Below, one piece after another: positions 4,133-43,857 of a stretch of DNA of 43,896 bases. Each line of letters opens with the position of its first letter. Position 1 is the first letter of the stretch. The stretch is from Trichosphaerium sp. ATCC 40318 (Eukaryota > Protista > Tubulinea): the NCBI GenBank assembly GCA_038496445.1, contig JALMLS010000095.1, positions 1 through 43,896 on the forward strand. The letters run 5' to 3'. A program made the position numbers and the translations under genes. The notes beneath the pieces are model-generated. The model saw only the letters and a program-made list of their open reading frames with translations. It was not told where the DNA came from and searched no databases.

Positions 4133-4575
4133 TTACCCCCCTATAAATAAACGAAAACTTTGGTGCCTATAGGTAACCCCTCAATAAGCATTTTTTTTTT
4201 TCCAAATTACAAATCCCTGCCCTATGGATGCCTTTAATAATTCACCTGCTAATTGCTATAACTGAACCTAGGCTTTACATTTCTGGTAACCAGAACACTA
4301 CCATTGTTCTCTTTTCCGCTCATTAACATACATGGGTACTGCACCGTTCTTTTGCCTAAAACAACTGTTTTAGGCAAAAGAACGGTGTGAACGCCTAAAA
4401 GCAACTGCAAAATAGTAGAAGGACTCCACTATTTTGCTCCTTTAATCACATATATATTTTAAAATACAAATCACCGCACGAATTTTTTTTCTTTTTTTAT
4501 TAAAGAAGTTACATACGCGTTCTATAACTAAATAAACTATTTGTTGATCCTTTTCACTAAATCTAACCATCGCAT
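4133..4575 (-). CDS. rps7: Ribosomal protein S7 cryptogene (copy 1)
   Basis: Mirror of 14918-15360. Confidence 0.65.
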
Positions 4576-5504
4576 GTTATTTTAAATTTTTACGTTCTTA
4601 AATTCACTGAAGTTAAAATTATAAAACTATATAGTATAAAAATATAATATAATATAATAAAAAAAATAAAAAAAAATAAAAAATAAATAAAATTAAATAT
4701 CAACAACATAAAGATGCCTTATTTTCCTGATATTTTATATAATTTTTATTTTTATTTCCTACCTCCTATATTACACCTGAATAATTTATTAAATTATTGA
4801 ATGGCAAAGATTACGCAATTTAAGTTAGTAAAATCTACGACGTAGATTTTACTAACTTAAATTGCGTAATCTTTGCCATTCAATAATCCCGCTAATAAAA
4901 ATTACATTTAAACAAATTCTTTAAACATTCTATATTTTTATTTGCAACGTATTTTTATTAATCCTTCTAAAATATTAATATTACTTCTATAAAATTATCC
5001 AAACTAAATTCTGACTTGAATAAACTCGGCTTAAATTTTAAATTTCTAATAATTTTTCAAAAATATCATCTTTATCAATATTGCACTATCTACATAAAAT
5101 AACGATAATAAAAAGACTAAATAACACCAGTACTTTTAACAAATAGATTATTTACTTTATTTTTAATCTTAAACTAAATTCTTTAAAAATAAACATTTAA
5201 CTTTTATTAAAGATACATATCTACTGAAACACTTTTTAAAGTTCGCGATATTGTCACAATATCGCCAGTCCAATCGCGATTGGGCTGCTGCTCCTATAAT
5301 TATGATGATACCTAATATACACCTACAGAAATATCCGTTACGACTGCAAAACCAAAGCAAGAACGTAGATTAAAACTCTAATAACTCTAAACTTATTAAC
5401 ATTTCTAATATACTTTGGAAGTTATTATAACCCCGATGATGTAAAAATACACAACAATAATCTAAAATTACCATTTTCTTTAATTTTTTATCTTCACATT
5501 TTTT

Positions 5505-6047
5505 CTACTCATTCATATCAAAATCAAACATGCGATAATCCTGTGTTAGCTCTACCGTTCATAAACTATACCTTTCCTTGATCATCATATCTCACTCATA
5601 ATAACCTGTTAATGGAAAATCCTTTCTTAAAGGAAACCTCTAAAAGTATAGTCTAATAAAATTCTACGCATATCTACATTCCCGAAAAGTATACGCCAAA
5701 TAAATCTTGCGCTCTCTTTCTAACCACAAACCTGATCTAAAAATTTTACACGATGTAAATAAACTACCTCTTTTTTTATATGCAAAACCTTCTAATCTTA
5801 TTCTACGATTTTAAATAAACTTGAAAAAACGTAAGCTACCTTCAATTTACAGCAGCTGCACTATTATCTACACAAAAATATCTAACAATGATTTTCAGCA
5901 TGCGCTCACTTAATTTTAACCAAAAAAATAAAAACCACAAATCGCCATATCTTTACAAGATCCTATAAAAGTTCTTAAATATGTCCAAAAGATTTAATAA
6001 AAGACCTAAAATAAATTCAAAAGCAAAAACTCTCTAATTCAACGCAT
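5505..6047 (-). CDS. nad9: NADH dehydrogenase subunit 9 cryptogene (copy 1)
   Basis: Mirror of 13446-13988. Confidence 0.9.
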
Positions 6048-6049
6048 AA

Positions 6050-7013
6050 TTAACCTAAAAAACTACCATATAAAATTACTTACCTCCCAAAGCTATTCAC
6101 TATTAAACAATAAAACCCTACCGTTATAGGTAACAAAGTTTTTCACCTAAACTCATTAAATGATCATATCTATATCTAGGTAATGAAGCTCTAACCAAAT
6201 AAACATAAGCATTATTAATAAACTTTTAATATACAAAAAATAGGAATTCCTTCCACAAATCATTATAAAAAAAAATATTTCGCCAAGAAATAAATTGGCA
6301 AACAAAATACTTAATATAATCATGTTTATATATCAGAAAGAAAAAAACAAACAAAACCCATGAAGAATATTCAACATTATAACAGACACTAATTCACCTT
6401 CTGCCTCTGGTAAATCTGCGAAAGGTGGCCTATTAGTCTCTGCTAATATTGTCACTATAAAAATTATTGCCGCTCAGGCGCATATAAAAATAAAATAGTA
6501 TCTTTTGTAAATTAACTACACTTATAAGATTTAACGTACCTGCTCAAGCACCAATATAATAATAACTAAACCAAAAGGAACTCATAAGAAATCATTTGGG
6601 CAGCAGCTCTTATTGCACTAAAAAAGCATATTTTGAGTTACTTGCCCAACCCGCAAAAATTAAACATAAACACCTAATGACGATATAACAAATATCAACA
6701 TCAAACTATATCTATATCTATGATTACATTTTAAAAGACAAAGGTAATAAGGATAAAAGAACTAAGATAAAAATAACAACCACAAGGAGCAAAAACAAAT
6801 AAAATACCATAGCGTATTGAGGAATTATTGTTTCTTTTCAAATCATTTCAACCCATCAGCTATGGCTGTAATAAACCATATAAACCTACTACATAGGTCC
6901 TTTCCTTCTTTGATACCAGCCATAACTTTTCTTTCCATAAAGTTAATAATGCTCCGCAAAAATAAACGGAAACATTAAAATAATAAAATAATAAACTTTA
7001 AAATAACTAACAT
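6050..7013 (-). CDS. nad1: NADH dehydrogenase subunit 1 cryptogene (copy 1)
   Basis: Mirror of 12480-13443. Confidence 0.92.
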
Positions 7014-7223
7014 TATTTTATTAATATATTTAAAATTACTAAAAAACAAAAAAAATAAAATAAAGAACTTAATTTATTTTTAATTTCGCTTCTTCCCTTG
7101 AAACTATAAAAAATTATAAACAAATAACTATCTTTTTTAAATATTCATTTATAATACAAATAACATTCTTTTTTTTCAAAATTTACACACTTTTCTTATT
7201 TTTTTACTTAAACTATAAGTAGT

Positions 7224-8282
7224 TTAAGTAAAAAAATAAGAAAAAAATTCATATATATTTCCCAGCATGTTGGTTATAAAATAATAAAAATCAACGCCTT
7301 TTTCATAAAATCATTCGCTTCATCTGTTTTCTATTTCTTTATCTAATATTGATAATTTTTTTTTTATTGCCTCTTTTATTATTGATCTAGACTTAACAAT
7401 CCCTCATAATATATCTTGCAGTAATCCATATTTTTCTAAAAGCTTTGCCCATAAATCACGTCGGGCCTCTAATAGCGATGCATTATTCTCCACAAATCTA
7501 TGCATTTGATCCTTAAAATACTTGGACAGTTTTCCTACATCTGTAGCTTGCCAGTCAAAAACTTCTATCAAATCATATAAATTTTTTTTTATTGCTCTTA
7601 AATTTTCTAAATCTAAGGTTTTTATGTTTTCTTTAGTATTAAAATAAGCAAATAATTCTTCTAATTTCAATTTCAGACTATTTATACAGACGTCTATATA
7701 ACACACTACATTTTTTTTAGATAATGCTGAAACACTGTTTTCTAAATAAATTTTTAAATTTTCACTGTTATACAATTCTCACTCTTTTATTCAATCAAAA
7801 ATTTTTTCTAATCCTTCTATATTTTCTCCTTCTATATTTTCTCCTTCTATTTTTTCTAATCCTTCTATATTTTCTCCTTCTATATTTTCTCCTTCTATTT
7901 TTTCTAATCCTTCTATATTTTCTCCTTCTATTTTTTCTCCTTCTATTTTTTCTAATCCTTCTATATTTTCTCCTTCTATTTTTTCTCCTTCTATTTTTTC
8001 TACTCCTTCTATTTTTTCTTCTTCTATTTTTTCTCCTTCTATTTTTTCTACTCCTTCTATTTTTTCTTCTTCTATTTTTTCTTCTCCTTCTATTTTTTCT
8101 CCTTCTATTTTTTCTTCTTCTTTCTTTTCTCCTTCTATATTTTTTTCTCCTTCTTCTGATGCTGATCTTCTATTTACTACCACCATCACGCCTACTATTA
8201 CTCCTATAATACAAGTGGCTGCAAAACCAAAACCTATGTCTACATACCCAATACCTCCCACAGCTAACGCCATAGGATCCAT
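7224..8282 (-). CDS. ORF352 (UGA=Trp), unedited ORFan (copy 1)
   Basis: Mirror of 11211-12269. Confidence 0.7.
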
Positions 8283-8539
8283 TCCTCATAACATAATAAC
8301 ATTTTTTTTTTGCTTTTTTATAACATTGTTATAAAAAAGCAAAAAAAAAATCGTTAATATTCATATAAAAAATATTATAAAAATTAAAATTAAAAATAAA
8401 TTATAACTAATAATTAATGTAAAAAAAAAACCCTAAACCTACAAAATCAAATATTTATAAATATCACACTTTCCACAATATTTCTCTTTTATTTATATTT
8501 TGAACCCAACATTATAAATACCAAAAGAACCTATTCACT

Positions 8540-8680
8540 CTAATATACTTTTTCCATTAAATTAAAACTATATTTATAAGAAAACAAATAAAAAACTATA
8601 CCTATACTTGCTCCTCCTACACCGACAGTACATACTCCTGCTGCTAATACTTTTGCTGCTAATACTATTTGTCATTCCAT
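8540..8680 (-). pseudogene. atp9-like N-terminal fragment (copy 1)
   Basis: Mirror of 10812-10952. Confidence 0.55.
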
Positions 8681-8697
8681 TTTTTTTTTACTCTTTT

Positions 8698-10046
8698 TTA
8701 AAATTTATACTATTACTATACTGTTTCTACCTGTTGCCGCAAATATTTTGACGATTTAACATATTCATTGTTATCTTAAAGTAATTACAAATAAAAAAAC
8801 TTACGATAACAATCAGTTTAAAAACACTTTATTATACTTCTTTTCATAATTACTTTTTTATAAAACTATTTTTCCCCAACAAAAAAAACATTACCTAGGA
8901 AAAATACAATAATAATTTACTGTTGGTATATTGCTCAAAATACTATACTTTTTATGAAAATATACATATTAATAATATGTATATTTTCATAAAAAGTATA
9001 GTATTTTGAGCAATATACCAACAGTAAATTATTGAAAAATAAAATAGAAATTACATTTTTTTCAACTCAAAAGACGCATTACCTTGTAACTTTTTGTAAA
9101 ACATTTTCTATATTAGAATATCAACATCTTTTTCCGTATAGACCAATCTGGCACCGCTACATCTACTCACGCCCTAAATTTTTACGTAAATTATAATTTA
9201 GATGAATAAATTTACTTAATCTATATTTAATAAATTTATTCTGTTTATTCTCCTTGCCCAAAAAACAAATTCAAATTATGCTTTGAATTTGTTTTTTTTT
9301 TACACCTTTTTTTGCAAGCCTAATAACCCTAAAAAACTAAAATTAACCTTGAAATATCTTGACTTATAAAATTCCTAAATTATTCTTACTTTCTCATTTT
9401 ATATTTAAATTTAAACTTTTGTTGTATAATACCACACTTCTTTTAAATTAGTATACCTTCCCATCTACTAAACATATTTTGATTTTTTTCAGCGAACCTT
9501 TCTTTACAATTAGCCCTACACCAAAGCTAAATATAATAATTCTTTATAGTACAGCCTATATTATTACACTAAGTATATAGACTTTTTACACCTAACCAAC
9601 AGTAAAATATTTCATTAGTTTTTCAAATCAAACTTTCTTAATCAGTAACCTAATAAAGGCAATTCTAAACGAATATCAGAAAACATATAAAAAAGCAATC
9701 AAACAAAGCAATTTCGAAATCAATTCACAAATAAAATACCATATTTGTTATAATTTATGACAATACAATCTGTTATTAACACTCCTATATTATTATAAAA
9801 TTAGTAATGCTATTTACACTTTATTCAAAACTACTATGTATACTAAAATGTAAAATTTAACGATTTGTATAGTCATAACCATATGAGATTAATAAGATCA
9901 ACTTACGCTTATATGATTGATCTTATTTTTCTCTATTTTCTTGTCAAAAAACCTAAATCTAATCCATAACGTTTAAAATAAAAACTGTAATGAAAATTTG
10001 CTTTATTAGTTAATCATTCTATATTAAAATCATTTAACTTGTTTAG
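8698..10046 (-). CDS. nad11: nad11 cryptogene, 3' two-thirds, cut at the fold-back junction (copy 1)
   Basis: Matches 40371-41731. Confidence 0.75.
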
Positions 10047-10049
10047 TTG

Positions 10050-10794
10050 GGAAGGTATACTAATTAAAAAAATTAAAACATGTTTAAATTTAAATATAAA
10101 ATCAAGTAAGAATAAAGGAATTTTATAAGTCAAGATATTTCAAGGTTTTTTAGATATTTCAAGGTTATTAGGCTTGCAAGGTTAAGGTGTAAAAAAAAAA
10201 CAAATTCAAAGCATAATTTGAATTTGTTTTTTGGGCAAGGAGAATAAACAGAATAAATTTATTAAATATAGATTAAGTAAATTTATTCATCTAAATTATA
10301 ATTTACGTAAAAATTTAGGGCGTGAGTAGATGTAGCGGTGCCAGATTGGTCTATACGGAAAAAGATGTTGATATTCTAATATAGAAAATGTTTTACAAAA
10401 AGTTACAAGGTAATGCGTCTTTTGAGTTGAAAAAAATGTAATTTCTATTTTATTTTTCAATAATTTACTGTTGGTATATTGCTCAAAATACTATACTTTT
10501 TATGAAAATATACATATTATTAATATGTATATTTTCATAAAAAGTATAGTATTTTGAGCAATATACCAACAGTAAATTATTATTGTATTTTTCCTAGGTA
10601 ATGTTTTTTTTGTTGGGGAAAAATAGTTTTATAAAAAAGTAATTATGAAAAGAAGTATAATAAAGTGTTTTTAAACTGATTGTTATCGTAAGTTTTTTTA
10701 TTTGTAATTACTTTAAGATAACAATGAATATGTTAAATCGTCAAAATATTTGCGGCAACAGGTAGAAACAGTATAGTAATAGTATAAATTTTAA
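10050..10794 (+). CDS. nad11: nad11 cryptogene, 3' part (copy 2)
   Basis: Frameshifted [24 protein letters not shown] resembles the Nad11 C-terminal DVILP..YTEK..YxNxEGRxQ motif. Contiguous with the nad11 5' end in copy 3. Confidence 0.7.
10459..10581. repeat. Perfect palindrome, 61-bp arms, 1-nt centre, inside the putative nad11 3' region
   Basis: aataatttactg...catatta-t-taatatg...cagtaaattatt. Confidence 0.95.
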
Positions 10795-10811
10795 AAAAGA
10801 GTAAAAAAAAA

Positions 10812-10952
10812 ATGGAATGACAAATAGTATTAGCAGCAAAAGTATTAGCAGCAGGAGTATGTACTGTCGGTGTAGGAGGAGCAAGTATAGGTATAGTTTT
10901 TTATTTGTTTTCTTATAAATATAGTTTTAATTTAATGGAAAAAGTATATTAG
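10812..10952 (+). pseudogene. atp9-like N-terminal fragment, 46 aa, no frameshift needed
   Basis: MEWQIVLAAKVLAAGVCTVGVGGASIGIVF resembles Atp9 helix 1 (AAK.IGAG.ATIG..GAG.GIG). No RNP loop or conserved Glu helix follows. Confidence 0.55.
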
Positions 10953-11141
10953 AGTGAATAGGTTCTTTTGGTATTTATAATGTTGGGTTCAAAATATAAA
11001 TAAAAGAGAAATATTGTGGAAAGTGTGATATTTATAAATATTTGATTTTGTAGGTTTAGGGTTTTTTTTTTTACATTAATTATTAGTTATAATTTATTTT
11101 TAATTTTAATTTTTATAATATTTTTTATATGAATATTAACG

Positions 11142-11192
11142 ATTTTTTTTTTGCTTTTTTATAACAATGTTATAAAAAAGCAAAAAAAAAAT
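11142..11192. repeat. Palindrome, 25-bp arms, upstream of ORF352
   Basis: a(t10)gc(t6)ataaca-a-tgttat(a6)gc(a10)t. Confidence 0.9.
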
Positions 11193-11210
11193 GTTATTAT
11201 GTTATGAGGA

Positions 11211-12269
11211 ATGGATCCTATGGCGTTAGCTGTGGGAGGTATTGGGTATGTAGACATAGGTTTTGGTTTTGCAGCCACTTGTATTATAGGAGTAATAGTA
11301 GGCGTGATGGTGGTAGTAAATAGAAGATCAGCATCAGAAGAAGGAGAAAAAAATATAGAAGGAGAAAAGAAAGAAGAAGAAAAAATAGAAGGAGAAAAAA
11401 TAGAAGGAGAAGAAAAAATAGAAGAAGAAAAAATAGAAGGAGTAGAAAAAATAGAAGGAGAAAAAATAGAAGAAGAAAAAATAGAAGGAGTAGAAAAAAT
11501 AGAAGGAGAAAAAATAGAAGGAGAAAATATAGAAGGATTAGAAAAAATAGAAGGAGAAAAAATAGAAGGAGAAAATATAGAAGGATTAGAAAAAATAGAA
11601 GGAGAAAATATAGAAGGAGAAAATATAGAAGGATTAGAAAAAATAGAAGGAGAAAATATAGAAGGAGAAAATATAGAAGGATTAGAAAAAATTTTTGATT
11701 GAATAAAAGAGTGAGAATTGTATAACAGTGAAAATTTAAAAATTTATTTAGAAAACAGTGTTTCAGCATTATCTAAAAAAAATGTAGTGTGTTATATAGA
11801 CGTCTGTATAAATAGTCTGAAATTGAAATTAGAAGAATTATTTGCTTATTTTAATACTAAAGAAAACATAAAAACCTTAGATTTAGAAAATTTAAGAGCA
11901 ATAAAAAAAAATTTATATGATTTGATAGAAGTTTTTGACTGGCAAGCTACAGATGTAGGAAAACTGTCCAAGTATTTTAAGGATCAAATGCATAGATTTG
12001 TGGAGAATAATGCATCGCTATTAGAGGCCCGACGTGATTTATGGGCAAAGCTTTTAGAAAAATATGGATTACTGCAAGATATATTATGAGGGATTGTTAA
12101 GTCTAGATCAATAATAAAAGAGGCAATAAAAAAAAAATTATCAATATTAGATAAAGAAATAGAAAACAGATGAAGCGAATGATTTTATGAAAAAGGCGTT
12201 GATTTTTATTATTTTATAACCAACATGCTGGGAAATATATATGAATTTTTTTCTTATTTTTTTACTTAA
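11211..12269 (+). CDS. ORF352 (UGA=Trp): N-terminal TM helix, acidic EKIEG repeats, helical C-terminal part; unedited ORFan
   Basis: The 163-aa and 123-aa track ORFs are in one frame separated only by TGA, and the frame runs to TAA at 12267-12269. It is open upstream to ~11004, with an in-frame ATG at 11199. Confidence 0.72.
11347..11693 (+). repeat. Coding tandem repeat, 15/18-nt units (gaaaaaatagaagga; E[K/N]IEG, with L/V variants)
   Basis: Directly visible. Confidence 0.95.
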
Positions 12270-12302
12270 ACTACTTATAGTTTAAGTAAAAAAATAAGAA
12301 AA
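12249..12302 (+). terminator. Hairpin (25-bp arms, 4-nt loop) overlapping the ORF352 stop; possible processing/termination signal
   Basis: ttttcttatttttttacttaaacta-ctta-tagtttaagtaaaaaaataagaaaa. Function is inferred. Confidence 0.5.
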
Positions 12303-12479
12303 GTGTGTAAATTTTGAAAAAAAAGAATGTTATTTGTATTATAAATGAATATTTAAAAAAGATAGTTATTTGTTTATAATTTTTTATAGTTTCAAGGGAA
12401 GAAGCGAAATTAAAAATAAATTAAGTTCTTTATTTTATTTTTTTTGTTTTTTAGTAATTTTAAATATATTAATAAAATA

Positions 12480-13443
12480 ATGTTAGTTATTTTAAAGTTT
12501 ATTATTTTATTATTTTAATGTTTCCGTTTATTTTTGCGGAGCATTATTAACTTTATGGAAAGAAAAGTTATGGCTGGTATCAAAGAAGGAAAGGACCTAT
12601 GTAGTAGGTTTATATGGTTTATTACAGCCATAGCTGATGGGTTGAAATGATTTGAAAAGAAACAATAATTCCTCAATACGCTATGGTATTTTATTTGTTT
12701 TTGCTCCTTGTGGTTGTTATTTTTATCTTAGTTCTTTTATCCTTATTACCTTTGTCTTTTAAAATGTAATCATAGATATAGATATAGTTTGATGTTGATA
12801 TTTGTTATATCGTCATTAGGTGTTTATGTTTAATTTTTGCGGGTTGGGCAAGTAACTCAAAATATGCTTTTTTAGTGCAATAAGAGCTGCTGCCCAAATG
12901 ATTTCTTATGAGTTCCTTTTGGTTTAGTTATTATTATATTGGTGCTTGAGCAGGTACGTTAAATCTTATAAGTGTAGTTAATTTACAAAAGATACTATTT
13001 TATTTTTATATGCGCCTGAGCGGCAATAATTTTTATAGTGACAATATTAGCAGAGACTAATAGGCCACCTTTCGCAGATTTACCAGAGGCAGAAGGTGAA
13101 TTAGTGTCTGTTATAATGTTGAATATTCTTCATGGGTTTTGTTTGTTTTTTTCTTTCTGATATATAAACATGATTATATTAAGTATTTTGTTTGCCAATT
13201 TATTTCTTGGCGAAATATTTTTTTTTATAATGATTTGTGGAAGGAATTCCTATTTTTTGTATATTAAAAGTTTATTAATAATGCTTATGTTTATTTGGTT
13301 AGAGCTTCATTACCTAGATATAGATATGATCATTTAATGAGTTTAGGTGAAAAACTTTGTTACCTATAACGGTAGGGTTTTATTGTTTAATAGTGAATAG
13401 CTTTGGGAGGTAAGTAATTTTATATGGTAGTTTTTTAGGTTAA
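12480..13443 (+). CDS. nad1: NADH dehydrogenase subunit 1 cryptogene
   Basis: With single-base insertions: [84 protein letters not shown]. Confidence 0.95.
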
Positions 13444-13445
13444 TT

Positions 13446-13988
13446 ATGCGTTGAATTAGAGAGTTTTTGCTTTTGAATTTATTTTAGGTCTTTTATTAAA
13501 TCTTTTGGACATATTTAAGAACTTTTATAGGATCTTGTAAAGATATGGCGATTTGTGGTTTTTATTTTTTTGGTTAAAATTAAGTGAGCGCATGCTGAAA
13601 ATCATTGTTAGATATTTTTGTGTAGATAATAGTGCAGCTGCTGTAAATTGAAGGTAGCTTACGTTTTTTCAAGTTTATTTAAAATCGTAGAATAAGATTA
13701 GAAGGTTTTGCATATAAAAAAAGAGGTAGTTTATTTACATCGTGTAAAATTTTTAGATCAGGTTTGTGGTTAGAAAGAGAGCGCAAGATTTATTTGGCGT
13801 ATACTTTTCGGGAATGTAGATATGCGTAGAATTTTATTAGACTATACTTTTAGAGGTTTCCTTTAAGAAAGGATTTTCCATTAACAGGTTATTATGAGTG
13901 AGATATGATGATCAAGGAAAGGTATAGTTTATGAACGGTAGAGCTAACACAGGATTATCGCATGTTTGATTTTGATATGAATGAGTAG
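13446..13988 (+). CDS. nad9: NADH dehydrogenase subunit 9 cryptogene
   Basis: WLERE.[57 protein letters not shown] after single insertions. Confidence 0.93.
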
Positions 13989-14286
13989 AAAAAATGTGAA
14001 GATAAAAAATTAAAGAAAATGGTAATTTTAGATTATTGTTGTGTATTTTTACATCATCGGGGTTATAATAACTTCCAAAGTATATTAGAAATGTTAATAA
14101 GTTTAGAGTTATTAGAGTTTTAATCTACGTTCTTGCTTTGGTTTTGCAGTCGTAACGGATATTTCTGTAGGTGTATATTAGGTATCATCATAATTATAGG
14201 AGCAGCAGCCCAATCGCGATTGGACTGGCGATATTGTGACAATATCGCGAACTTTAAAAAGTGTTTCAGTAGATATGTATCTTTAA
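13981..14286 (+). CDS. rpl11: Probable ribosomal protein L11 cryptogene (very divergent)
   Basis: C-terminal IVTISRTLKSVSVDM resembles L11 I.GTARSMGI.V. Position at the head of the r-protein cluster fits. Confidence 0.45.
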
Positions 14287-14296
14287 TAAAAGTTAA

Positions 14297-14730
14297 ATGT
14301 TTATTTTTAAAGAATTTAGTTTAAGATTAAAAATAAAGTAAATAATCTATTTGTTAAAAGTACTGGTGTTATTTAGTCTTTTTATTATCGTTATTTTATG
14401 TAGATAGTGCAATATTGATAAAGATGATATTTTTGAAAAATTATTAGAAATTTAAAATTTAAGCCGAGTTTATTCAAGTCAGAATTTAGTTTGGATAATT
14501 TTATAGAAGTAATATTAATATTTTAGAAGGATTAATAAAAATACGTTGCAAATAAAAATATAGAATGTTTAAAGAATTTGTTTAAATGTAATTTTTATTA
14601 GCGGGATTATTGAATGGCAAAGATTACGCAATTTAAGTTAGTAAAATCTACGTCGTAGATTTTACTAACTTAAATTGCGTAATCTTTGCCATTCAATAAT
14701 TTAATAAATTATTCAGGTGTAATATAGGAG
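14297..14730 (+). CDS. Unidentified cryptogene, possibly rpl10
   Basis: Follows putative rpl11. FLLAGLLNGK resembles the L10 LLGG..EG motif, but weakly. Confidence 0.3.
14606..14700. repeat. Perfect palindrome, 47-bp arms
   Basis: attattgaatggc...atctacg-t-cgtagat...gccattcaataat. Confidence 0.95.
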
Positions 14731-14917
14731 GTAGGAAATAAAAATAAAAATTATATAAAATATCAGGAAAATAAGGCATCTTTATGTTGTTGATATTTAA
14801 TTTTATTTATTTTTTATTTTTTTTTATTTTTTTTATTATATTATATTATATTTTTATACTATATAGTTTTATAATTTTAACTTCAGTGAATTTAAGAACG
14901 TAAAAATTTAAAATAAC

Positions 14918-15360
14918 ATGCGATGGTTAGATTTAGTGAAAAGGATCAACAAATAGTTTATTTAGTTATAGAACGCGTATGTAACTTCTTTAATAAAAAA
15001 AGAAAAAAAATTCGTGCGGTGATTTGTATTTTAAAATATATATGTGATTAAAGGAGCAAAATAGTGGAGTCCTTCTACTATTTTGCAGTTGCTTTTAGGC
15101 GTTCACACCGTTCTTTTGCCTAAAACAGTTGTTTTAGGCAAAAGAACGGTGCAGTACCCATGTATGTTAATGAGCGGAAAAGAGAACAATGGTAGTGTTC
15201 TGGTTACCAGAAATGTAAAGCCTAGGTTCAGTTATAGCAATTAGCAGGTGAATTATTAAAGGCATCCATAGGGCAGGGATTTGTAATTTGGAAAAAAAAA
15301 AATGCTTATTGAGGGGTTACCTATAGGCACCAAAGTTTTCGTTTATTTATAGGGGGGTAA
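14918..15360 (+). CDS. rps7: Ribosomal protein S7 cryptogene
   Basis: PKTVVLGKRTVAVPMYVNERKRETMVVFWL...LAGELLKASIGQG resembles S7 RRVGGATYQVP...AIRWL...LA.EL.DA...G. Confidence 0.68.
15106..15151. repeat. Palindrome, 22-bp arms, inside rps7
   Basis: caccgttcttttgcctaaaaca-gt-tgttttaggcaaaagaacggtg. Confidence 0.95.
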
Positions 15361-15410
15361 GAGTAAATATAAGGATAGACGTAATTTAAAAATAAATATA
15401 AATATTAAAA

Positions 15411-15583
15411 ATGATAAAAGTAAAGCGCTGGTGAATCAATTATTTGTAGATTGAATATTTTTTGGTTCTTTAAAGAAGATACAAATTATTTAAGTGGTTG
15501 GTGTATTTTAGAGAATCCTATAAAATGTGTATTTTAGAAATGGATATATGTTTCAAGGATTTCATATATAAATAAATTAATAA
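15411..15583 (+). CDS. rps19: Probable short, divergent S19 cryptogene
   Basis: LFVD...IQI.S...IL....RNG..F resembles S19 PFVD..IKIWSR.STIL...YNGK.F; synteny fits. Confidence 0.4.
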
Positions 15584-15584
15584 G

Positions 15585-15834
15585 ATGAGGTTTAGAGAGA
15601 GAGGTGCCGTGTTGTTTGCGAATTACGCGTTATTTTTAGAAGGTTAACTAAGCAGCTGCATATTTATGTGACAACCTTATGTAGCAGTGCGTGAAGAGAA
15701 GGAACTTTAACAAATTTTAGGTTATAGTAAGATGATGGGTTTATTGATAACAGAGATGCTAGAGCAAGTGATAAATTTGGAGAACAGTTAGAAGGTTACA
15801 AATGCGTTATAAATTACCTGTTGAGTGTTTTTAA
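15585..15834 (+). CDS. rpl16: Probable L16 cryptogene
   Basis: RITRYF..LHIYV.PY.AV...KG...GLLITE...YKLPV resembles the L16 C-terminal KLP motif; synteny fits. Confidence 0.5.
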
Positions 15835-16008
15835 GTGCAGCTTGAAGAGTTTAAATATGTACGGGAATCAAGGGGTGTTAGGGTTCCGTCGGTAGTGTTG
15901 TTAGTTCAGATGGGTTAGTTCAGTGGTGGATTGTTGTTTAGCAGGGACACAAAAACATTTAAAAGTCAGTATTATTTTAACAGTTGGATGTTGATTATGT
16001 ATATATAG
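15820..16008 (+). CDS. Possible L14 cryptogene
   Basis: Weak similarity plus position after rpl16. Confidence 0.3.
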
Positions 16009-16049
16009 AAAAGCAAAAAAAATAATATATAGGGGTGTAAATTTAAAAA

Positions 16050-16500
16050 TTTAGGAATTTTAAATTTACAAGTTGATTTAATTTAGGATTAAAAAATTTA
16101 AAGAAAAAATTTAAATTTACGTACATTAGAGGGTTACGATGATGTGTAATGTAATGTATCATTATGTGGATTATCAAAACATTATTTGGTTTCTGAAGTT
16201 ATTGATTTTTTTTTATAGCTTATATTATGTAGAATTTTTAAATTTGTTAAATAAAGAACGTGCGACGTGTGTGGTAAAATAGAAGATGTGGGTTAAGAGC
16301 TAGAGTAAATGATGTTGGAAAGTTTATTACGTGAACGCAAGATGTTCGAAACACCGTATTTTGGTGTTTCGAACATCTTGCGTTCACGTAATAAAGAGGA
16401 GATAGTAAAAAGATCCAGCGTTAGTTTTACTTGATCTTTGGCTTTAAATTTAAAGCCAAAGATCAAGTAAAACTAACGCTGGATCTTTAGAAATTAAATT
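16050..16500 (+). CDS. Possible L5 cryptogene
   Basis: Mostly synteny (between putative rpl14 and rps14); weak motifs. Confidence 0.25.
16323..16395. repeat. Palindrome, 33-bp arms, 7-nt loop
   Basis: tttattacgtgaacgc...aacacc-gtatttt-ggtgtt...gcgttcacgtaataaa. Confidence 0.95.
16409..16488. repeat. Perfect 80-bp palindrome with no spacer
   Basis: aaagatccagcg...gctttaaa|tttaaagc...cgctggatcttt. Confidence 0.95.
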
Positions 16501-16528
16501 TAAATGTAAATTAGTGAACATTTAAATA

Positions 16529-16751
16529 ATGGCGTACTTATAAATTTTGTGGGATGCTGCACAAACTTTTACTTCTAGAAAAAGTCGACAAAGAAATGCA
16601 AAAAGAATAAATTTAAAAGATTAAGGCGAGTTATATAAAACGTTATATTAAGTTTGACGTAAACATATTTTTAGTCGTGAGAGAAAAAGTTAAATTTAAA
16701 TAGATTTTATTTACGTCAAAAAGTTTTTTTTGATCTTTTAATTTAGTTTAG
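16529..16751 (+). CDS. rps14: Probable S14 cryptogene
   Basis: ASYIKRY..LT.KHIFSR...LNRFYLRQ resembles S14 RIKNRC..TGR.R....LSR..FR. Confidence 0.4.
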
Positions 16752-17167
16752 TGAATATATTTTGTAATTTTATAGTTTTTTATGAGTTATTATTATACTT
16801 ATAAAGGTTTATTTTAGTTGATAAATGAATAAAAATTCATTAAGTTATTTTTTAAAGAGAAATAAAACAGAAGAATATATTAAACATTATCTTAATTTGT
16901 TTAAAGCGCGAGATTATCTACTTTAAAAATAGCAATTTAAAAGATATAAGTAAATAAGATTGTTAGGGGAATCCTGTTGAAAAGGGCATGTAGTAAAAGG
17001 AATCTCTTTTGATAGGTTGCTTTATCAAAACACACTAAAAAGAAATGTATTATTTAAAGCAATATAATTATATTGATCTAAATATTGGGATTGAAAGGTG
17101 TAAAAGGTCAATATGCCAAAAAACATTAAAAGAAATAAAGGGGACCCAAACTGAAAAAAAAATCTAA
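16751..17167 (+). CDS. Cryptic r-protein region (rps8/rpl6 expected by synteny)
   Basis: Coding-like frameshifted sequence; identity not resolved. Confidence 0.2.
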
Positions 17168-17172
17168 TAAGA

Positions 17173-17507
17173 ATGTTAGGAATAATTATAAAAAATTAAA
17201 AAGAAGAGAAAAAAATTAAAGAATTTGGGGGGAAATTTTGGTTTGGTGTAAAGTCATTATCTCTTGGTGATATTATATGTTGTCAAAAATGAAATTTATT
17301 TATTTTGTTTATTAAATAGTAAATATATAAAAAAACTAAGCCCGTTAAAAGAATTCCAAAAACTAGAAGTGCTTTGAAAAAAAGAAGACGTAGAATTAGA
17401 CGATTAAGGTTTAGTAAAAAAATGATGAAAGGTGGCGTGCATGGTTTGAATATTGTGACAAAAAGGAAAGTCAAAGTTATTATTTGAGCATGCATCAGAT
17501 ATTGTAA
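17173..17507 (+). CDS. rps13: Probable S13 cryptogene
   Basis: NFGLGVK...RIRRL...WKGWR resembles S13 IYGIG...I.RL..I.SYRG.RH. Confidence 0.5.
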
Positions 17508-17536
17508 TAAAAAAAATAAAAGTCAAATTTTTATAT

Positions 17537-17592
17537 AACAAAAGATCGGCTTTTAAGATACCTATAGGTATCTTAAAAGCCGATCTTTTGTT
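17537..17592. repeat. Perfect 56-bp palindrome
   Basis: aacaaaagatcggcttttaagataccta|taggtatcttaaaagccgatcttttgtt. Confidence 0.95.
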
Positions 17593-17702
17593 TATTTTAG
17601 GGTATTAAAAGAAAGTTTAGTGTAAAAAATTTAAATATAAAAGTTTATCAAAAATAAATTGCCTTTGGTATATTCAAATTATTTTAGTAAAGGTAAGTGT
17701 AT

Positions 17703-17749
17703 TATCCACTAAACGCATGCGTGAAATAGGTCAATGCGTTTAGTGGATA
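17703..17749. repeat. Hairpin, 16-bp arms, 15-nt loop
   Basis: tatccactaaacgcat...atgcgtttagtggata. Confidence 0.9.
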
Positions 17750-18049
17750 GATTTTGAAAAAGAAGAGAAAAAAGAGTATATTATCTAATTTATTTTAAAT
17801 AAAAGATAGGAAATATTTTTCAAACAAATGTAGGTTTAATTTTTTAAAAAAGAGCCGTGAAGGTTAAATTTAGCGAGAAGTGATTATAAATATAAAGTTT
17901 AGATAAATTAAAACAATATATACATACATGTTTTATAATAAATTAATAGATTAATAAAAGGTGTAGGTTTAATATAAAAAAAAATAGAGGTAAAAAATCG
18001 CGTAATAATATAAATATGAATGCGTGATTTTTAAAAAATTATGGCGTTA

Positions 18050-19100
18050 TAAGTTTATGGACAAAATTAATGTATAAAAGAAGTTATGGTACTAGTTTAG
18101 TAATATTAACAAAAAATTAAATAAGATGGGTATTTAAAAAGAGTTCGAAAAAAAAAGAGTAATATAACTTAATAAGATTATATTACTCTTTTTTTTTCGA
18201 ACAGAAATCGCGTGAGCTTTTACATTTATTTTTGTTTAATACGCAGCTTTATAAAAGTAAAACAAAAAAAAGGGTAAAAAAAATAAAAGTAAAATTAATA
18301 AATTGTGAAAAAGATCAGATAAAAGAAAAAAAAGAAATAAACTTGCAAAAAATAACAATAAAAATAAAAAAATTAAAATCAAAAGCAAAAAAAAAAAGAA
18401 AAAAAAAAAAGAAAAAAATAATAATACTAATAGGAAATAAAAAACAAGCGTCTATTATTACCACTAAAAGCTGGCAAAATATAAAAATAAAAAATAAAGA
18501 AGTATATTTAACAACAAAAAAAAAAGTAAGAAATAAAAAACGTTGAAATAAGAGGATGCGTATTAGTGACGTCGTGAAAAAGGTATTAAAATTTGTATAG
18601 TTTTCAAAACGTTTTGAAAAAAATATAAATAAATTTATACAAAATGCAATAGATTTTTATATAATGTTTTAAATTATTTAAAATAAGTATATTTAATTTT
18701 GTATTTCTTGAATATTTTCTTTGCATGTGGTTTTATTTCTTTTTTTATTTAGAATTTCATCGATGAATAAAATTTGATGAAATTTGAAAATTGATGAAGA
18801 GAATTAGTAACAGAAACTAAAGCCTCACATGTCTTTTAAAAAAATTAACTTTAATGGGCGTAAAGTATTGTTAAATTTAAGGTTATATAATTATAGTATT
18901 ATTTTATAGATTATAAAAGTAAGATAAATTAATGAAAGGTTACTTATTTTTTGAAATTTACGTCGTAGGTTTGCGTGTCGTATGAAATATTTAGTGATTG
19001 GTTGTTAAGTTTATGAAGGTAGGATTTATTCATATTTAAGTTTTCAGAGAACTCTAAGAAAGTGGGAGTTTATTGAGAGATTATACTTATATAACGGAAA
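18050..19100 (+). CDS. Lys/Arg-rich cryptogene, possibly rps4
   Basis: KASHVF..INFNGRKV near 18820-18870 resembles the S4 motif ARQLI.H..V.VNG.KV; boundaries unknown. Confidence 0.3.
18143..18202. repeat. Hairpin, 25-bp arms, 10-nt loop
   Basis: gttcg(a9)gagtaatataa...ttatattactc(t9)cgaac. Confidence 0.9.
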
Positions 19101-19110
19101 TAGAGTCTTT

Positions 19111-19251: not shown

Positions 19252-19290
19252 CTATAAAAAATCCTTGTTAGAAGGAAAAAAGAAAAAAAA

Positions 19291-19370: not shown

Positions 19371-19372
19371 AA

Positions 19373-19444: not shown

Positions 19445-19446
19445 AA

Positions 19447-19516: not shown

Positions 19517-19527
19517 TTTTTTTTAAA

Positions 19528-38895: not shown

Positions 38896-39954
38896 TTAAG
38901 TAAAAAAATAAGAAAAAAATTCATATATATTTCCCAGCATGTTGGTTATAAAATAATAAAAATCAACGCCTTTTTCATAAAATCATTCGCTTCATCTGTT
39001 TTCTATTTCTTTATCTAATATTGATAATTTTTTTTTTATTGCCTCTTTTATTATTGATCTAGACTTAACAATCCCTCATAATATATCTTGCAGTAATCCA
39101 TATTTTTCTAAAAGCTTTGCCCATAAATCACGTCGGGCCTCTAATAGCGATGCATTATTCTCCACAAATCTATGCATTTGATCCTTAAAATACTTGGACA
39201 GTTTTCCTACATCTGTAGCTTGCCAGTCAAAAACTTCTATCAAATCATATAAATTTTTTTTTATTGCTCTTAAATTTTCTAAATCTAAGGTTTTTATGTT
39301 TTCTTTAGTATTAAAATAAGCAAATAATTCTTCTAATTTCAATTTCAGACTATTTATACAGACGTCTATATAACACACTACATTTTTTTTAGATAATGCT
39401 GAAACACTGTTTTCTAAATAAATTTTTAAATTTTCACTGTTATACAATTCTCACTCTTTTATTCAATCAAAAATTTTTTCTAATCCTTCTATATTTTCTC
39501 CTTCTATATTTTCTCCTTCTATTTTTTCTAATCCTTCTATATTTTCTCCTTCTATATTTTCTCCTTCTATTTTTTCTAATCCTTCTATATTTTCTCCTTC
39601 TATTTTTTCTCCTTCTATTTTTTCTAATCCTTCTATATTTTCTCCTTCTATTTTTTCTCCTTCTATTTTTTCTACTCCTTCTATTTTTTCTTCTTCTATT
39701 TTTTCTCCTTCTATTTTTTCTACTCCTTCTATTTTTTCTTCTTCTATTTTTTCTTCTCCTTCTATTTTTTCTCCTTCTATTTTTTCTTCTTCTTTCTTTT
39801 CTCCTTCTATATTTTTTTCTCCTTCTTCTGATGCTGATCTTCTATTTACTACCACCATCACGCCTACTATTACTCCTATAATACAAGTGGCTGCAAAACC
39901 AAAACCTATGTCTACATACCCAATACCTCCCACAGCTAACGCCATAGGATCCAT
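38896..39954 (-). CDS. ORF352 (copy 3)
   Basis: Mirror of 11211-12269. Confidence 0.7.
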
Positions 39955-40370: not shown

Positions 40371-42440
40371 TTAAAATTTATACTATTACTATACTGTTTC
40401 TACCTGTTGCCGCAAATATTTTGACGATTTAACATATTCATTGTTATCTTAAAGTAATTACAAATAAAAAAACTTACGATAACAATCAGTTTAAAAACAC
40501 TTTATTATACTTCTTTTCATAATTACTTTTTTATAAAACTATTTTTCCCCAACAAAAAAAACATTACCTAGGAAAAATACAATAATAATTTACTGTTGGT
40601 ATATTGCTCAAAATACTATACTTTTTATGAAAATATACATATTAATAATATGTATATTTTCATAAAAAGTATAGTATTTTGAGCAATATACCAACAGTAA
40701 ATTATTGAAAAATAAAATAGAAATTACATTTTTTTCAACTCAAAAGACGCATTACCTTGTAACTTTTTGTAAAACATTTTCTATATTAGAATATCAACAT
40801 CTTTTTCCGTATAGACCAATCTGGCACCGCTACATCTACTCACGCCCTAAATTTTTACGTAAATTATAATTTAGATGAATAAATTTACTTAATCTATATT
40901 TAATAAATTTATTCTGTTTATTCTCCTTGCCCAAAAAACAAATTCAAATTATGCTTTGAATTTGTTTTTTTTTTACACCTTTTTTTGCAAGCCTAATAAC
41001 CCTAAAAAACTAAAATTAACCTTGAAATATCTTGACTTATAAAATTCCTAAATTATTCTTACTTTCTCATTTTATATTTAAATTTAAACTTTTGTTGTAT
41101 AATACCACACTTCTTTTAAATTAGTATACCTTCCCATCTACTAAACATATTTTGATTTTTTTCAGCGAACCTTTCTTTACAATTAGCCCTACACCAAAGC
41201 TAAATATAATAATTCTTTATAGTACAGCCTATATTATTACACCTAAGTATATAGACTTTACACCTAACCAACAGTAAAATATTTCATTAGTTTTTCAAAT
41301 CAAACTTTCTTAATCAGTAACCTAATAAAGGCAATTCTAAACGAATATCAGAAAACATATAAAAAAGCAATCAAACAAAGCAATTTCGAAATCAATTCAC
41401 AAATAAAATACCATATTTGTTATAATTTACACAATACAATCTGTTATTACACTCCTATATTATTCATAAAATTTCTAATGCTATTTACACTTTAATATCA
41501 AAACTACTCTTATACTAAAATGTAAAATTTAACGATTTGTATAGTCATAACCATCATGAGATTAAATAAGATCAACTTACGCTTATATGAGTTGATCTTA
41601 TTTTTCTCTATTTTCTTGTCAAAAAACCTAAATCTACATCCCCATAACCGTTTAAAATAAAAACTGTAAACGCAAATCTTGCTTTATTAGTTAATCATTC
41701 TATATTAAAAATTCATTTAACTTGCTTTAGTTCGAACTATATATATAAAAATTACATCATTGTTAAATTTCCTCTAACACATCATTAACATCTAAAGTAT
41801 CCTGAACAACTGCTCCCATTTTCTAGACGCAAACTCAAAAGGCTTCAAGGTAAATGCTCTACAGGACATACTGCTATAAAATTTGTTGTTAATTCTCCGT
41901 AATTATTTTTTCTCTATACGTACTAATTCTAAAAACATGCCACGACCTAAAAAACTAAACCAAAACTACCAAATACTTCTAAGCTAAACAAAACACACTA
42001 GCACACTGAATACACTTGTCATATATGTGCTTGTTAATTCTCAACAAAAAAACCTAATACTGACCTTTTTTTTTTTTCATGTATCTTCCTCTATCATCCC
42101 AAAAATAAAAGAAATATCTTGTAAATCACAACACCCGCCTGATCACAAATTGGACAATCCAACGGATGATTACATAGTAAATATTCCATTACATTTTCTC
42201 TAGCAATCTCTATCTTAAAGATATTTTCTTATAACTAAACCTGATACTAGAGGTACACTACATGCTATTTCTAATTAGACGTTCTAGTTGTCTCTATTAA
42301 ACATAATCTGCAGTTCCCAATATTCCTAATTTTTCAAAATAACATAATCTTGGTAAATTTAAATTAATACATCTAAACCTTGGATTGCTGTTCGCCACTC
42401 GGTACCAAAATTACTCGATTAATCGCTTTATACCTACCAT
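40371..42440 (-). CDS. nad11: NADH dehydrogenase subunit 11 (75-kDa Fe-S) cryptogene, full length
   Basis: [48 protein letters not shown]; ATG at 42440; 3' end approximate. Confidence 0.92.
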
Positions 42441-42519: not shown

Positions 42520-42619
42520 AACTTTGATTTTTTTTAAAAAGATTAATTGAATATCTTTTAGAAATAACCAAATTTTTCTAAAAGATATTCAATTAATCTT
42601 TTTAAAAAAAATCAAAGTT
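42520..42619 (-). terminator. Hairpin, 45-bp arms, 10-nt loop, overlapping the stop of the upstream ORFan
   Basis: aactttgattttttttaaaaagattaattgaatatcttttagaaa / tttctaaaag...atcaaagtt. Function is inferred. Confidence 0.55.
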
Positions 42620-43857
42620 TTTTAAAAAGTCAAGTAAAAAATACATAATGTCAATTAACAAATTTATCAAAATTTACAGGAGACAAACTTATTCATAAAA
42701 TAGGAAGTATAAAAAAAGTCTCCCCAAAGCTTGCAAAAGTTACTAATTTGTCAAGAACAATTAAATCTAAAAAAGAATATAAAGTTTCTATAAAAACGAA
42801 CTCTCTTTCTTTTTCAAGCATGCTTATAATTTTATCTTTTCAAATTTCATTTATACTATCTATTATAGTATATCAATCCATTCATCAAACAAGTTCATCC
42901 TTTTTAATATCTCTTCATAAATTTTCGTAATAGTTACGTAAATTCTCTTCATAATTTTTAGAAAAATTTAAAACAGCATCATGAATGTTTTCACTGTAAC
43001 TACTCTCTAAATCTGCTAATTCTTCACCTTTCTTTTTTTTTTTTATAAATTCTTTTCATTTAGGATAATCTTGCACAATACTTAAATCAACGTTATGTTT
43101 AACACAAGTATTTGTTAAATAATTAAAAAAAATATCTAGCTGATTTTCAAAATATTTAGTAGTTTGTTCAATTAAATTTTCTTTATCTATTTCCATTGCT
43201 TTTTTTTTTTCTAACATTATTTTTTTTAATTCTACTATTAAATTTACATTTTTTTCACTTATATCATAATTTTCAATTATAAATTCTACTCAGCTTAAAT
43301 TCTCAAACATAACTGACAAATTACTTTCTTCTATTATTATTCCTTCGTTTTCTAAAGTATAAGTTACAAAATTAAAAAAAATCAGCATCTTGACTTTGCT
43401 CAATTTCACCTATATGATCTACTATTTTTTTTTTTATAAACTCTTTATCATTTTGCATAAATAGAATAAAATTATTTATTTCTTCTAAATTAAGCATAGA
43501 ATTAATAAAAAAATGATAATAAATAGAACACATAACTAATCATAAGATCATAGAAGCAAACGCACTATAGCTTCAAGTTAAACTATATCCTTGGCTAGCT
43601 AGTTGCGTATATAGATCTGCTACCACTGTTGGATCTATAGGTACTAAATTGTCTAACTTATCCACTATTTCTTCTCTGCTTTTTTCTTCATTAAAGAACG
43701 TTAAGGTTAAGCCTCCCCCCTCGAAGCTTAACCATTCAAAAAAATGAACCCTCCCTTTCGCTAATAAAGCATAATTATTTATCAAATCTTCTTTAAAAAA
43801 AGGATTATTATAAAATACTAATTCTTTACTAAATAAAAAATAAAATTTAAAAAACAC
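42558..43857 (-). CDS. ~430-codon ORFan (UGA=Trp), unedited, with one apparent +1 homopolymer shift near 43375
   Basis: With TGA=W the frame is open from 43857 to ~43375, and then from 43379 to TAA at 42558-42560 (274 codons). Acidic and helical, with hydrophobic segments. Confidence 0.68.

What the first reader, a model, noticed from the sequence alone, without database searches (positions are those of the whole stretch)
11211..12269. Hidden 352-aa ORFan is frameshift-free: an internal control and a second, unedited gene class
With UGA=Trp the two track ORFs join into 1059 nt without a frameshift, despite dozens of A5-A10 runs. The flanking nad11 and nad1 break every few dozen bases. Homopolymer-type sequencing error should hit this ORF hardest, so the gaps look gene-specific. 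The editing machinery must then skip these ORFs or they are untranscribed. Physarum mtDNA likewise carries unedited unassigned ORFs. ORFans could include editing factors or plasmid-derived genes (speculative).
Basis: partly seen in the sequence, partly recalled or inferred. Interest (0 to 1): 0.75.

Follow-up and report, generated by a model that had tools for sequence, protein, structure and literature searches.

The report
Intact unknown gene among broken mitochondrial genes
In a marine amoeba's mitochondrial DNA, where most genes lack letters that are added back in the RNA, this 352-codon reading frame of unknown function is written out in full; it is one of at least ten such frames, a pattern described before in the slime mould Physarum.

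Summary
Observation confirmed. With TGA read as a sense codon, 11211-12269 (possibly from ATG 11199) is one 352-codon frame with no TAA/TAG. It has 27 homopolymers of 5 or more bases. It is identical in six mitochondrial copies; a seventh, at a low-quality contig end, differs by one A in the A10 run. nad1 downstream needs four single-base doublings in its first 95 nt. nad11 upstream is broken too, but is not the direct neighbour: a duplicated atp9 5' fragment and a 230-nt repeated module lie between.

The predicted protein has one N-terminal membrane helix, a strongly acidic (IEGEK)n tandem array whose units are all multiples of 3 nt, and a helical C-terminal half. Perfect 25-bp hairpins bound the frame. 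No relative appeared in Pfam, 1.84 billion representative proteins, or metagenome, genome and viral scans.

It is not alone. A 468-codon ORF beside nad11, at least eight more intact ORFs on two other mitochondrial contigs, and true atp9 are also unbroken. This parallels Physarum's unedited unassigned ORFs; in amoeba BB2 all four unknown ORFs are edited.

My reading: a young, lineage-specific ORF that never acquired editing sites. The scan had already found the editing system and the unedited atp9 elsewhere in this genome, but not this ORF.

The parts
10792..10916 (+). Duplicated 5' fragment of atp9: upstream bases plus the first ~28 codons, then divergence and a TAA at 10914. It is not fused to the ORF.
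   Evidence: 96-99% identical to copies at C350:1823, C309:381, C309:17323 and C369:20503. The full 77-codon atp9 is at L025 1517-1750.
10905..11133 (+). ~230-nt repeated module upstream of the ORF. A near-identical copy lies on mitochondrial contig C339, where a different hairpin follows it.
   Evidence: the alignment is about 99% identical up to about 11133, then unrelated.
11142..11192 (.). Perfect 25-bp palindrome (hairpin) ending 6 nt before ATG 11199 and 18 nt before ATG 11211.
   Evidence: I9, 100% complementary. As RNA it folds at -25.7 kcal/mol, z = -7.8.
11211..12269 (+). Intact 352-codon ORF, open only if TGA is a sense codon; alternative start at ATG 11199.
11211..11338 (+). N-terminal part with one predicted membrane helix (residues ~8-39), rich in Gly/Val/Ile/Ala.
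   Evidence: Kyte-Doolittle 19-residue windows reach 1.6-2.3 only here. G makes up 53% of codon position 1.
11339..11692 (+). Tandem array. All 19 internal units are 15, 18 or 30 nt and encode IEGEK, IEGEEK, IEGVEK, IEGLEK or IEGEN. Net charge of this region is -32.
   Evidence: TRF finds periods of 15 and 48 nt, with 93% matches at period 48.
11693..12266 (+). Non-repetitive C-terminal half (~190 codons), predicted all-helical, holding all five TGA codons.
   Evidence: 0 TAA/TAG in frame against 22 and 11 in the other forward frames. G is 27% at codon position 1 against 13% and 12% at positions 2 and 3. AF2 single-sequence model has pLDDT 51.5 and is all helices.
12249..12302 (.). Perfect 25-bp palindrome. 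Its first arm encodes the last seven codons and the TAA stop.
   Evidence: I8. As RNA it folds at -26.6 kcal/mol, z = -8.1.
12556..13560 (+). nad1 cryptogene, the downstream neighbour; the 3' end given here is approximate.
   Evidence: Frame reading. PF00146 E = 2.7e-6 on 13020-13157. At least 17 insertions are needed (lower bound).
7224..8282 (-). Second copy of the ORF in the window, in the palindromic arm.
   Evidence: 100% identical.
38896..39954 (-). Third copy of the ORF in the window.
   Evidence: 100% identical.
41788..42228 (-). 5' part of the nad11 cryptogene, upstream of the third ORF copy on the minus strand.
   Evidence: PF10588 E = 4.6e-9, matching profile positions 1-23 of 40 only. 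The conserved motifs are spread over three frames.
42561..43857 (-). Second intact unassigned ORF: 468 codons with 14 TGA. It appears as two pieces here because of an indel near the contig end; it is one frame on C369 (15001-13598).
   Evidence: No Pfam match. It ends inside a perfect 45-nt palindrome.

Best explanation
The ORF is a real reading frame, intact in the DNA, read in the mitochondrial code where UGA is a sense codon (very probably Trp). It would encode a lineage-specific, single-pass membrane protein: an N-terminal anchor, a very acidic (IEGEK)n linker, and a helical C-terminal domain.

It belongs to a set of at least ten long unassigned ORFs in this mitochondrial genome. Like atp9, and unlike nad1, nad11, atp1 and cox3, they need no base-doubling insertions.

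The likeliest reason is historical. Editing sites are individual single-letter losses that accumulated in old genes. This ORF is young, built from a recent tandem expansion inside a mosaic of recent duplications and perfect palindromes, and it has never acquired such a loss. So the machinery has nothing to insert there, rather than actively skipping it.

Shown: the frame is intact, it is beyond chance, it is identical across copies, its neighbours are broken, it has no relatives, and a class of such ORFs exists. Inferred: youth as the cause, and that the ORF is expressed and translated.
For: - Open frame and TGA positions.
- Stop avoidance is frame-specific, G is enriched at codon position 1, and simulations never reach this length. 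Zero frame shifts are needed, against at least 5 in every shuffle.
- All repeat units are multiples of 3 nt.
- TGA is a sense codon. The intact atp9 has an in-frame TGA at codon 3, and an identical public protein reads MEW. atp1 reads GEY[TGA]RELGMDALIIYDD, and the downstream part aligns to ATP synthase alpha residues 259-280. nad1 reads KLI[TGA]KETIIP.
- G-doubling at the first TGA would end the frame at codon 171.
- Six identical copies.
- Native composition: the sense strand of the non-repeat C-terminal half is 8% C, as in neighbouring genes (7-11%).
- Signs of youth: units 93% alike at period 48; flanking duplications 96-99% identical; perfect hairpins at both ends.
- No relative among 1.84 billion representatives, although atp9 variants 97-100% identical to this genome's are in the larger collection that those representatives are drawn from.
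- Other intact ORFs exist.
- Precedent for a transcribed, unedited ORF in Physarum (php15/ORF Z; PMC3152335, PMC10048350).
Against: - There is no RNA or protein evidence. The exact N-terminal piece is absent from 15 billion public proteins, and phmmer found not even a self-match for the C-terminal piece. Any public assembly that carries this organism's atp9 therefore has no gene call for this ORF.
- No relatives means no test of purifying selection.
- In BB2, the only published system of this kind, all four unknown ORFs are edited (PMC5421314). Lack of editing is therefore not a general property of unknown ORFs.
- About one third of the ORF is low-complexity repeat that is open in several frames.
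- The only tRNA-Trp found has anticodon CCA, which should not read UGA.
Confidence: 0.5

Rival explanations
1. Silent young ORF of the Physarum SURF type. The frame is intact only because it arose or was rearranged recently. It is not transcribed, or only as read-through, it makes no protein, and it will decay.
For: - In Physarum, 19 of 20 such ORFs are untranscribed in growing plasmodia yet intact (PMC3152335, PMC10048350).
- No gene call for this ORF appears in public assemblies, although atp9 of the same organism does.
- The setting looks young: a recent tandem array, duplicated modules and perfect palindromes.
- Strong hairpins on both sides could insulate it from neighbouring transcription.
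Against: - It lies between nad11 and nad1 on the same strand of a compact arm where every gene points the same way, so read-through transcription is likely.
- The codon-position G bias matches the other long ORF.
- At least ten intact ORFs of up to 675 codons are hard to keep open without selection, given that single-letter losses are evidently frequent in this genome.
Confidence: 0.3
2. A very divergent classical mitochondrial gene, for example a small membrane subunit such as ATP synthase b or 8, that like atp9 happens to carry no editing sites.
For: - The architecture (N-terminal membrane helix followed by a long helical soluble part) resembles such subunits.
- In Physarum the unedited php25 was tentatively called atpB (PMC3152335).
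- atp9 shows that a classical gene can be free of editing sites here.
Against: - No Pfam match at E <= 0.01 on any piece.
- No hit in 1.84 billion proteins.
- The ESM Atlas gave only unnamed helical proteins with low recognition.
- A 120-residue young acidic repeat is atypical for such subunits.
- An inventory of which classical genes are missing was not made.
Confidence: 0.1
3. Chance open frame in purine-rich, low-complexity DNA; not a gene at all.
For: - The repeat third is open in two of three forward frames and two of three reverse frames.
- AT-rich skewed DNA gives long chance ORFs: the simulated mean of the longest ORF is about 130 codons and the maximum 207-247.
Against: - After removing the repeat, the frame is still longer than in all 300 unit-composition simulations.
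- The C-half has 0 stops against 22 and 11 in the other frames, and p < 0.005 by shuffling.
- TGA is tolerated while TAA/TAG are excluded, as in the 468-codon ORF with 14 TGA.
Confidence: 0.07
4. The contrast is a sequencing artefact. The neighbours' missing letters are assembly errors that happened to spare this ORF.
For: - Contig ends in this assembly do carry indels. The first ~1.5 kb of the window, the C588 copy (A10->A9) and the split of the 468-codon ORF near 43400 all show this.
Against: - Between 10184 and 18014 the three window copies differ at a single T-run.
- The inferred missing letters in nad1 are at single bases, not long runs.
- The ORF's 27 long runs are intact in six copies.
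- The same editing type was confirmed by PCR and Sanger sequencing in BB2 (PMC5421314).
Confidence: 0.02

Closest known systems
Physarum polycephalum 'significant unassigned reading frames' (SURFs/ORFs 1-20, php15/ORF Z)
   Same: Long intact ORFs with no detectable relatives, many with membrane helices, lie among cryptogenes that need dense insertional editing. They need no editing themselves (PMC3152335, PMC10048350).
   Different: - The editing chemistry and lineage differ: C and other insertions in a myxomycete, against neighbour-doubling of the BB2 type here.
- Physarum SURFs sit mostly in large untranscribed blocks, and one block carries a plasmid-type RNA polymerase. This ORF sits between nad11 and nad1, and no polymerase was found.
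- The transcription status here is unknown.
Unknown reading frames (URFs) of amoeba BB2 mitochondria
   Same: The same kind of editing system (single-nucleotide insertions identical to a neighbour), a large inverted-repeat genome architecture, and lineage-specific ORFs of unknown function (PMC5421314).
   Different: All four BB2 URFs are edited (113 insertions), and 43 of 44 protein genes are edited. Here at least ten long ORFs need none, even though editing of the classical genes is denser.
Plant CMS-type chimeric mitochondrial ORFs
   Same: A novel ORF lies in a recombination mosaic next to a duplicated 5' fragment of atp9 and a repeated upstream module.
   Different: The atp9 fragment ends in a stop about 300 nt upstream and is not fused in frame. 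The similarity of the N-terminus to atp9 is not significant (p = 0.07).

Membership tests
Physarum-type unedited unassigned ORFs (SURFs) | ORF far longer than chance in a genome where classical genes lack open frames | tested here: met
   352 codons, or 234 from the ATG without the repeat, against a simulated maximum of 207 (unit composition; 247 with local composition). Classical gene regions show no frame longer than 126 codons.
Physarum-type unedited unassigned ORFs (SURFs) | No similarity to classical mitochondrial genes or other proteins | tested here: met
   Pfam gave nothing significant. The word search, phmmer against 1.84e9 proteins, and metagenome and genome scans were all blank. The viral hit was spurious.
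Physarum-type unedited unassigned ORFs (SURFs) | Transcript absent, or present without insertions | not testable with these tools
Both metagenome scans were blank.
Physarum-type unedited unassigned ORFs (SURFs) | Link to a linear plasmid (polymerase genes) | tested here: not met
   No significant Pfam match (nothing at or above a curated cut-off) and no polymerase on 27 TGA-free pieces of this and the other intact ORFs. Only pieces could be searched, so the test is weak.
BB2-type base-doubling cryptogene | The frame is restored only by single-nucleotide insertions that copy a neighbour | tested here: not met
   The ORF needs 0 insertions. nad1 next door needs 4 in 95 nt.
Mitochondrial gene read with UGA = Trp (code 4) | In-frame TGA in conserved genes at positions compatible with Trp or another aromatic residue | tested here: met
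   atp9 codon 3, atp1 GEY[TGA]RE, and nad1 KLI[TGA]KE.
Mitochondrial gene read with UGA = Trp (code 4) | A tRNA-Trp able to read UGA (anticodon UCA) | tested here: not met
   Only trnW(CCA) was found in the window and in the other four wholly mitochondrial contigs (C350, C369, C339, C309). ARAGORN misses most of the edited tRNA genes, so the test is weak.
ATP synthase subunit b / 8 | Profile match to the family | tested here: not met
   No Pfam match. Only the general architecture is similar.

The most novel reading that the evidence does not exclude
The intact ORFs, together with atp9, are a functional, mitochondrially encoded gene class that the base-doubling system cannot or must not edit. 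For example, they might be components of site recognition or of the palindrome-generating DNA machinery. Comparing them with the cryptogenes would then reveal the so far unknown signal that specifies editing sites.
Probability: 0.07. Interest if true: 0.85.

Novelty: new variant of a known kind. Interest (0 to 1): 0.42.

Why it matters
Nobody knows how neighbour-doubling RNA editing chooses its sites; the BB2 study found no motif. Here about 1 kb of native-composition, same-strand sequence needs no insertion, while the gene 290 nt downstream needs one about every 25 nt. Together with at least nine further intact ORFs and atp9, this gives a built-in negative set for finding site determinants. 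It also serves as a quality control showing that the missing letters are not sequencing errors. Finally, the odd coexistence of cryptogenes and intact unknown ORFs, so far a Physarum peculiarity, recurs in an unrelated insertional-editing lineage. That fits the idea that editing sites accumulate only in old genes.

Tried and rejected
Two metagenome scans were blank: one with the ORF protein, and one with a nad1 pattern that allowed both the edited and the unedited forms. The genome-contig scan was blank.
- Viral contigs: the two hits were seeded by one 8-residue pattern, lie partly outside an ORF on a phage contig, and were rejected.
- GG-depletion idea: I asked whether cryptogene DNA lacks GG relative to the ORF. 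It does not; observed/expected GG is about 0.85-1.16 everywhere.
- Paralogy between the ORF and the 468-codon ORF: not significant.
- N-terminus derived from atp9: not significant, p = 0.07.
- G-doubling at TGA codons: this closes the frame at codon 171.
- The minimum-frameshift measure cannot tell cryptogenes from random sequence; it only shows that the ORF is exceptional.
- ESM Atlas: only unnamed helical clusters, with low recognition.
- AlphaFold single-sequence model: pLDDT 51.5. I did not run a fold search because matches to such a model are meaningless.
- The C588 copy as a test of selection: its differences sit at the junction and the contig end and look like errors.
- The tufA-like reading at 26300-26620: Pfam and PDB searches on short pieces did not confirm it.

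Full report
**What the window is.** The window is AT-rich organellar DNA with a strong strand-specific G>C skew. It carries mitochondrial-type SSU rRNA and tRNA genes. It is assembled as a palindromic concatemer: 1-9416 is the reverse complement of 10082-19494, 10082-23668 is the reverse complement of 27497-41089, and 1-10091 repeats 31671-41770. It is contig C291 of a 70-Mb eukaryotic assembly. Earlier notes of this scan (s1-383636 and others; leads, not evidence) say that the mitochondrial genes lack one letter about every 33 bases and that RNA restores each as a copy of its neighbour. That editing type has been published only for amoeba BB2 (PMC5421314).

- With TGA read as a sense codon, 11211-12269 is a single 352-codon frame ending in TAA. 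It has five TGA, two TGG, and no TAA/TAG. An in-frame ATG at 11199 could be the true start.
- The ORF contains 22 A-runs and 5 T-runs of 5 or more bases, up to A10.
- It occurs three times in the window and four more times on contigs C350, C369 and C588.
- Six copies are identical. Across 10184-18014 the three window copies differ only at one T-run outside the ORF.
- The C588 copy has A10->A9. It lies near a low-quality contig end next to non-mitochondrial DNA.

**More than chance.**
- About one third of the ORF (11339-11692) is a tandem array that is trivially open in several frames.
- The non-repeat C-terminal half has 0 TAA/TAG in frame, against 22 and 11 in the other forward frames.
- With the array removed, the frame (303 codons stop-to-stop, 234 from the ATG) exceeds the longest ORF in 300 order-2 Markov simulations of the unit (maximum 207).
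- All 200 shuffles of the C-half needed at least 5 frame shifts to be read through; the real sequence needs none.
- G is enriched at codon position 1 (27% against 13% and 12%), the same pattern as in the other long ORF.
- All 19 internal repeat units are 15, 18 or 30 nt long.

**TGA is a sense codon here.**
- The complete, unbroken atp9 (77 codons; PF00137 full length) has an in-frame TGA at codon 3. An identical public protein reads MEW.
- atp1 reads GEY[TGA]RELGMDALIIYDDLSKHA. The part after the TGA aligns to residues 259-280 of ATP synthase alpha.
- nad1 reads KLI[TGA]KETIIP.
- The long ORFs exclude TAA/TAG yet carry 5-24 TGA each.
- G-doubling at the first TGA would close the frame at codon 171, so the long frame requires unedited TGA.
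- One loose end: the only tRNA-Trp found has anticodon CCA.

**The neighbours are broken.**
- The nad1 start (12556 onward) can be read as [40 protein letters not shown] only by doubling a C, an A, an A and a T within 95 nt. Each insertion shifts the DNA frame in the same direction.
- Pfam recognises nad1 (PF00146, E = 2.7e-6). The match covers residues 1-33 of the 46-aa piece, ending about where the conserved reading is lost.
- nad11 (PF10588, E = 4.6e-9) matches only profile positions 1-23 of 40. Its conserved CPICDQ..ECDLQD..DRGRY motifs lie in three frames.
- Every 1-kb stretch of the arm needs at least 14-23 insertions as a lower bound; the ORF needs 0.
- The inferred missing letters are single bases, not long homopolymers.

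**A correction to the context.**
- nad11 is not adjacent. Directly upstream lie a duplicated 5' fragment of atp9 (10792-10916; 28 codons, then divergence and a stop) and a ~230-nt module that is about 99% identical to a copy on contig C339.
- A perfect 25-bp hairpin (11142-11192) precedes the start. A second one (12249-12302) contains the last seven codons and the stop. Both fold far better than shuffles (z about -8).
- About a dozen such perfect palindromes of unrelated sequence occur along the arm (compare note s1-383846).

**The predicted product.**
- One N-terminal membrane helix (residues ~8-39).
- An (IEGEK)n stretch with net charge -32.
- A ~190-residue C-terminal part predicted to be all-helical.
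- No family match at E <= 0.01 in Pfam.
- No hit by word search, and none in 1.84 billion representative proteins, not even a self-match.
- No exact N-terminal piece in 15 billion proteins.
- No related locus in the metagenome or genome collections. The two viral hits are artefacts of the seeding pattern.
- The ESM Atlas gave only unnamed helical clusters.

**It is one of a class.**
- Beside nad11 lies a 468-codon ORF with 14 TGA. It is intact on C369 and split in the window by an indel near the contig end. It also ends inside a perfect palindrome.
- Mitochondrial contigs C339 and C309 carry at least eight more intact ORFs of 231-675 codons on the G-rich strand.
- None of 27 TGA-free pieces from these ORFs and from this ORF had a significant Pfam match.
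- The two ORFs near nad11 are not detectably related to each other.

**How it most likely works.**
- In BB2 the insertions are site-specific with no recognisable motif and are probably co-transcriptional. Intergenic RNA has almost none (PMC5421314). A stretch without sites is therefore simply transcribed as written.
- The ORF's sense strand is as C-poor as native genes, so it is not a recent foreign import.
- Its tandem array, its flanking near-identical duplications, its perfect palindromes and its lack of any relative all point to a young, lineage-specific sequence. Close relatives of this organism are nonetheless visible in public data through atp9 variants.
- I therefore read it as a young ORF that never acquired the single-letter losses accumulated by old genes.
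- Whether it is expressed is open. Its position between same-strand genes favours at least read-through transcription. The absence of any public gene call for it, and the Physarum precedent of silent intact ORFs, favour silence.

**Comparison with known cases.**
- The closest known case is Physarum polycephalum. It has 20-26 intact, unassigned, unedited ORFs among 43 cryptogenes. All but one are untranscribed in plasmodia, and php15/ORF Z is transcribed and unedited (PMC3152335, PMC10048350).
- BB2 differs: all four of its unknown ORFs are edited.
- The ORF is not a plant CMS-type chimera, because the atp9 fragment is not fused to it.

**Limits.**
- Proteins could only be searched as TGA-free pieces.
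- No fold search was run, because the model confidence was too low.

Noticed in passing
window 1-43896; junction at 10082-10091: The contig is a palindromic concatemer with a 31,670-bp unit. One fold-back junction lies inside nad11 and truncates it, and the first ~1.5 kb of the window carries many indels. This is either a real rearranged or linear isomer or a long-read assembly artefact.
   Followed up: partly
G000 contigs C339 (L029-L032, L037, L038) and C309 (L033-L036): A block of at least eight long intact ORFs of unknown function (231-675 codons, up to 24 TGA each). Several are extremely Lys-rich, and one has a membrane helix plus an acidic tail. Copies on the two contigs differ by frameshifts, for example 531 against 675 codons.
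   Followed up: partly
L031 4708-4802 (C339 24708-24802); L015 3557-3656 (C369 13557-13656): Perfect 45-nt-arm palindromes lie inside or at the end of intact ORFs and remain in frame. In one case they encode mirror-like peptides (SDAIASS...DEAIASD).
   Followed up: no
window 19836-19907 and 31258-31329: The only detectable tRNA-Trp has anticodon CCA, although TGA is clearly used as a sense codon. How UGA is decoded is unexplained.
   Followed up: partly
window 26300-26620 (+), next to the centre of the large palindrome: EF-Tu-like motifs (KARGITIN, EYETE, KNMIIGAxQM, DGVILVV) are spread over three frames, which suggests a mitochondrial tufA cryptogene. To my knowledge this gene is rare in mitochondrial DNA outside jakobids. 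Pfam and PDB searches on the short in-frame pieces gave nothing.
   Followed up: partly
G000 contig C588 1-7828 versus 7828-11685: DNA with 42-46% GC and no skew is joined to mitochondrial sequence (nad11 to the start of nad1, including the ORF). This is either a nuclear insertion of mitochondrial DNA or a chimeric contig.
   Followed up: partly
proteins P0001, P0100-P0104: atp9 proteins 97-100% identical to this genome's occur in JGI/IMG, Logan and ENA assemblies. The organism and close relatives are therefore present in public environmental data and could be mined for the ORF.
   Followed up: partly
window 18163-18597 (+): A further 145-codon Lys-rich open frame begins inside a perfect 25-bp palindrome (18143-18202).
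   Followed up: no
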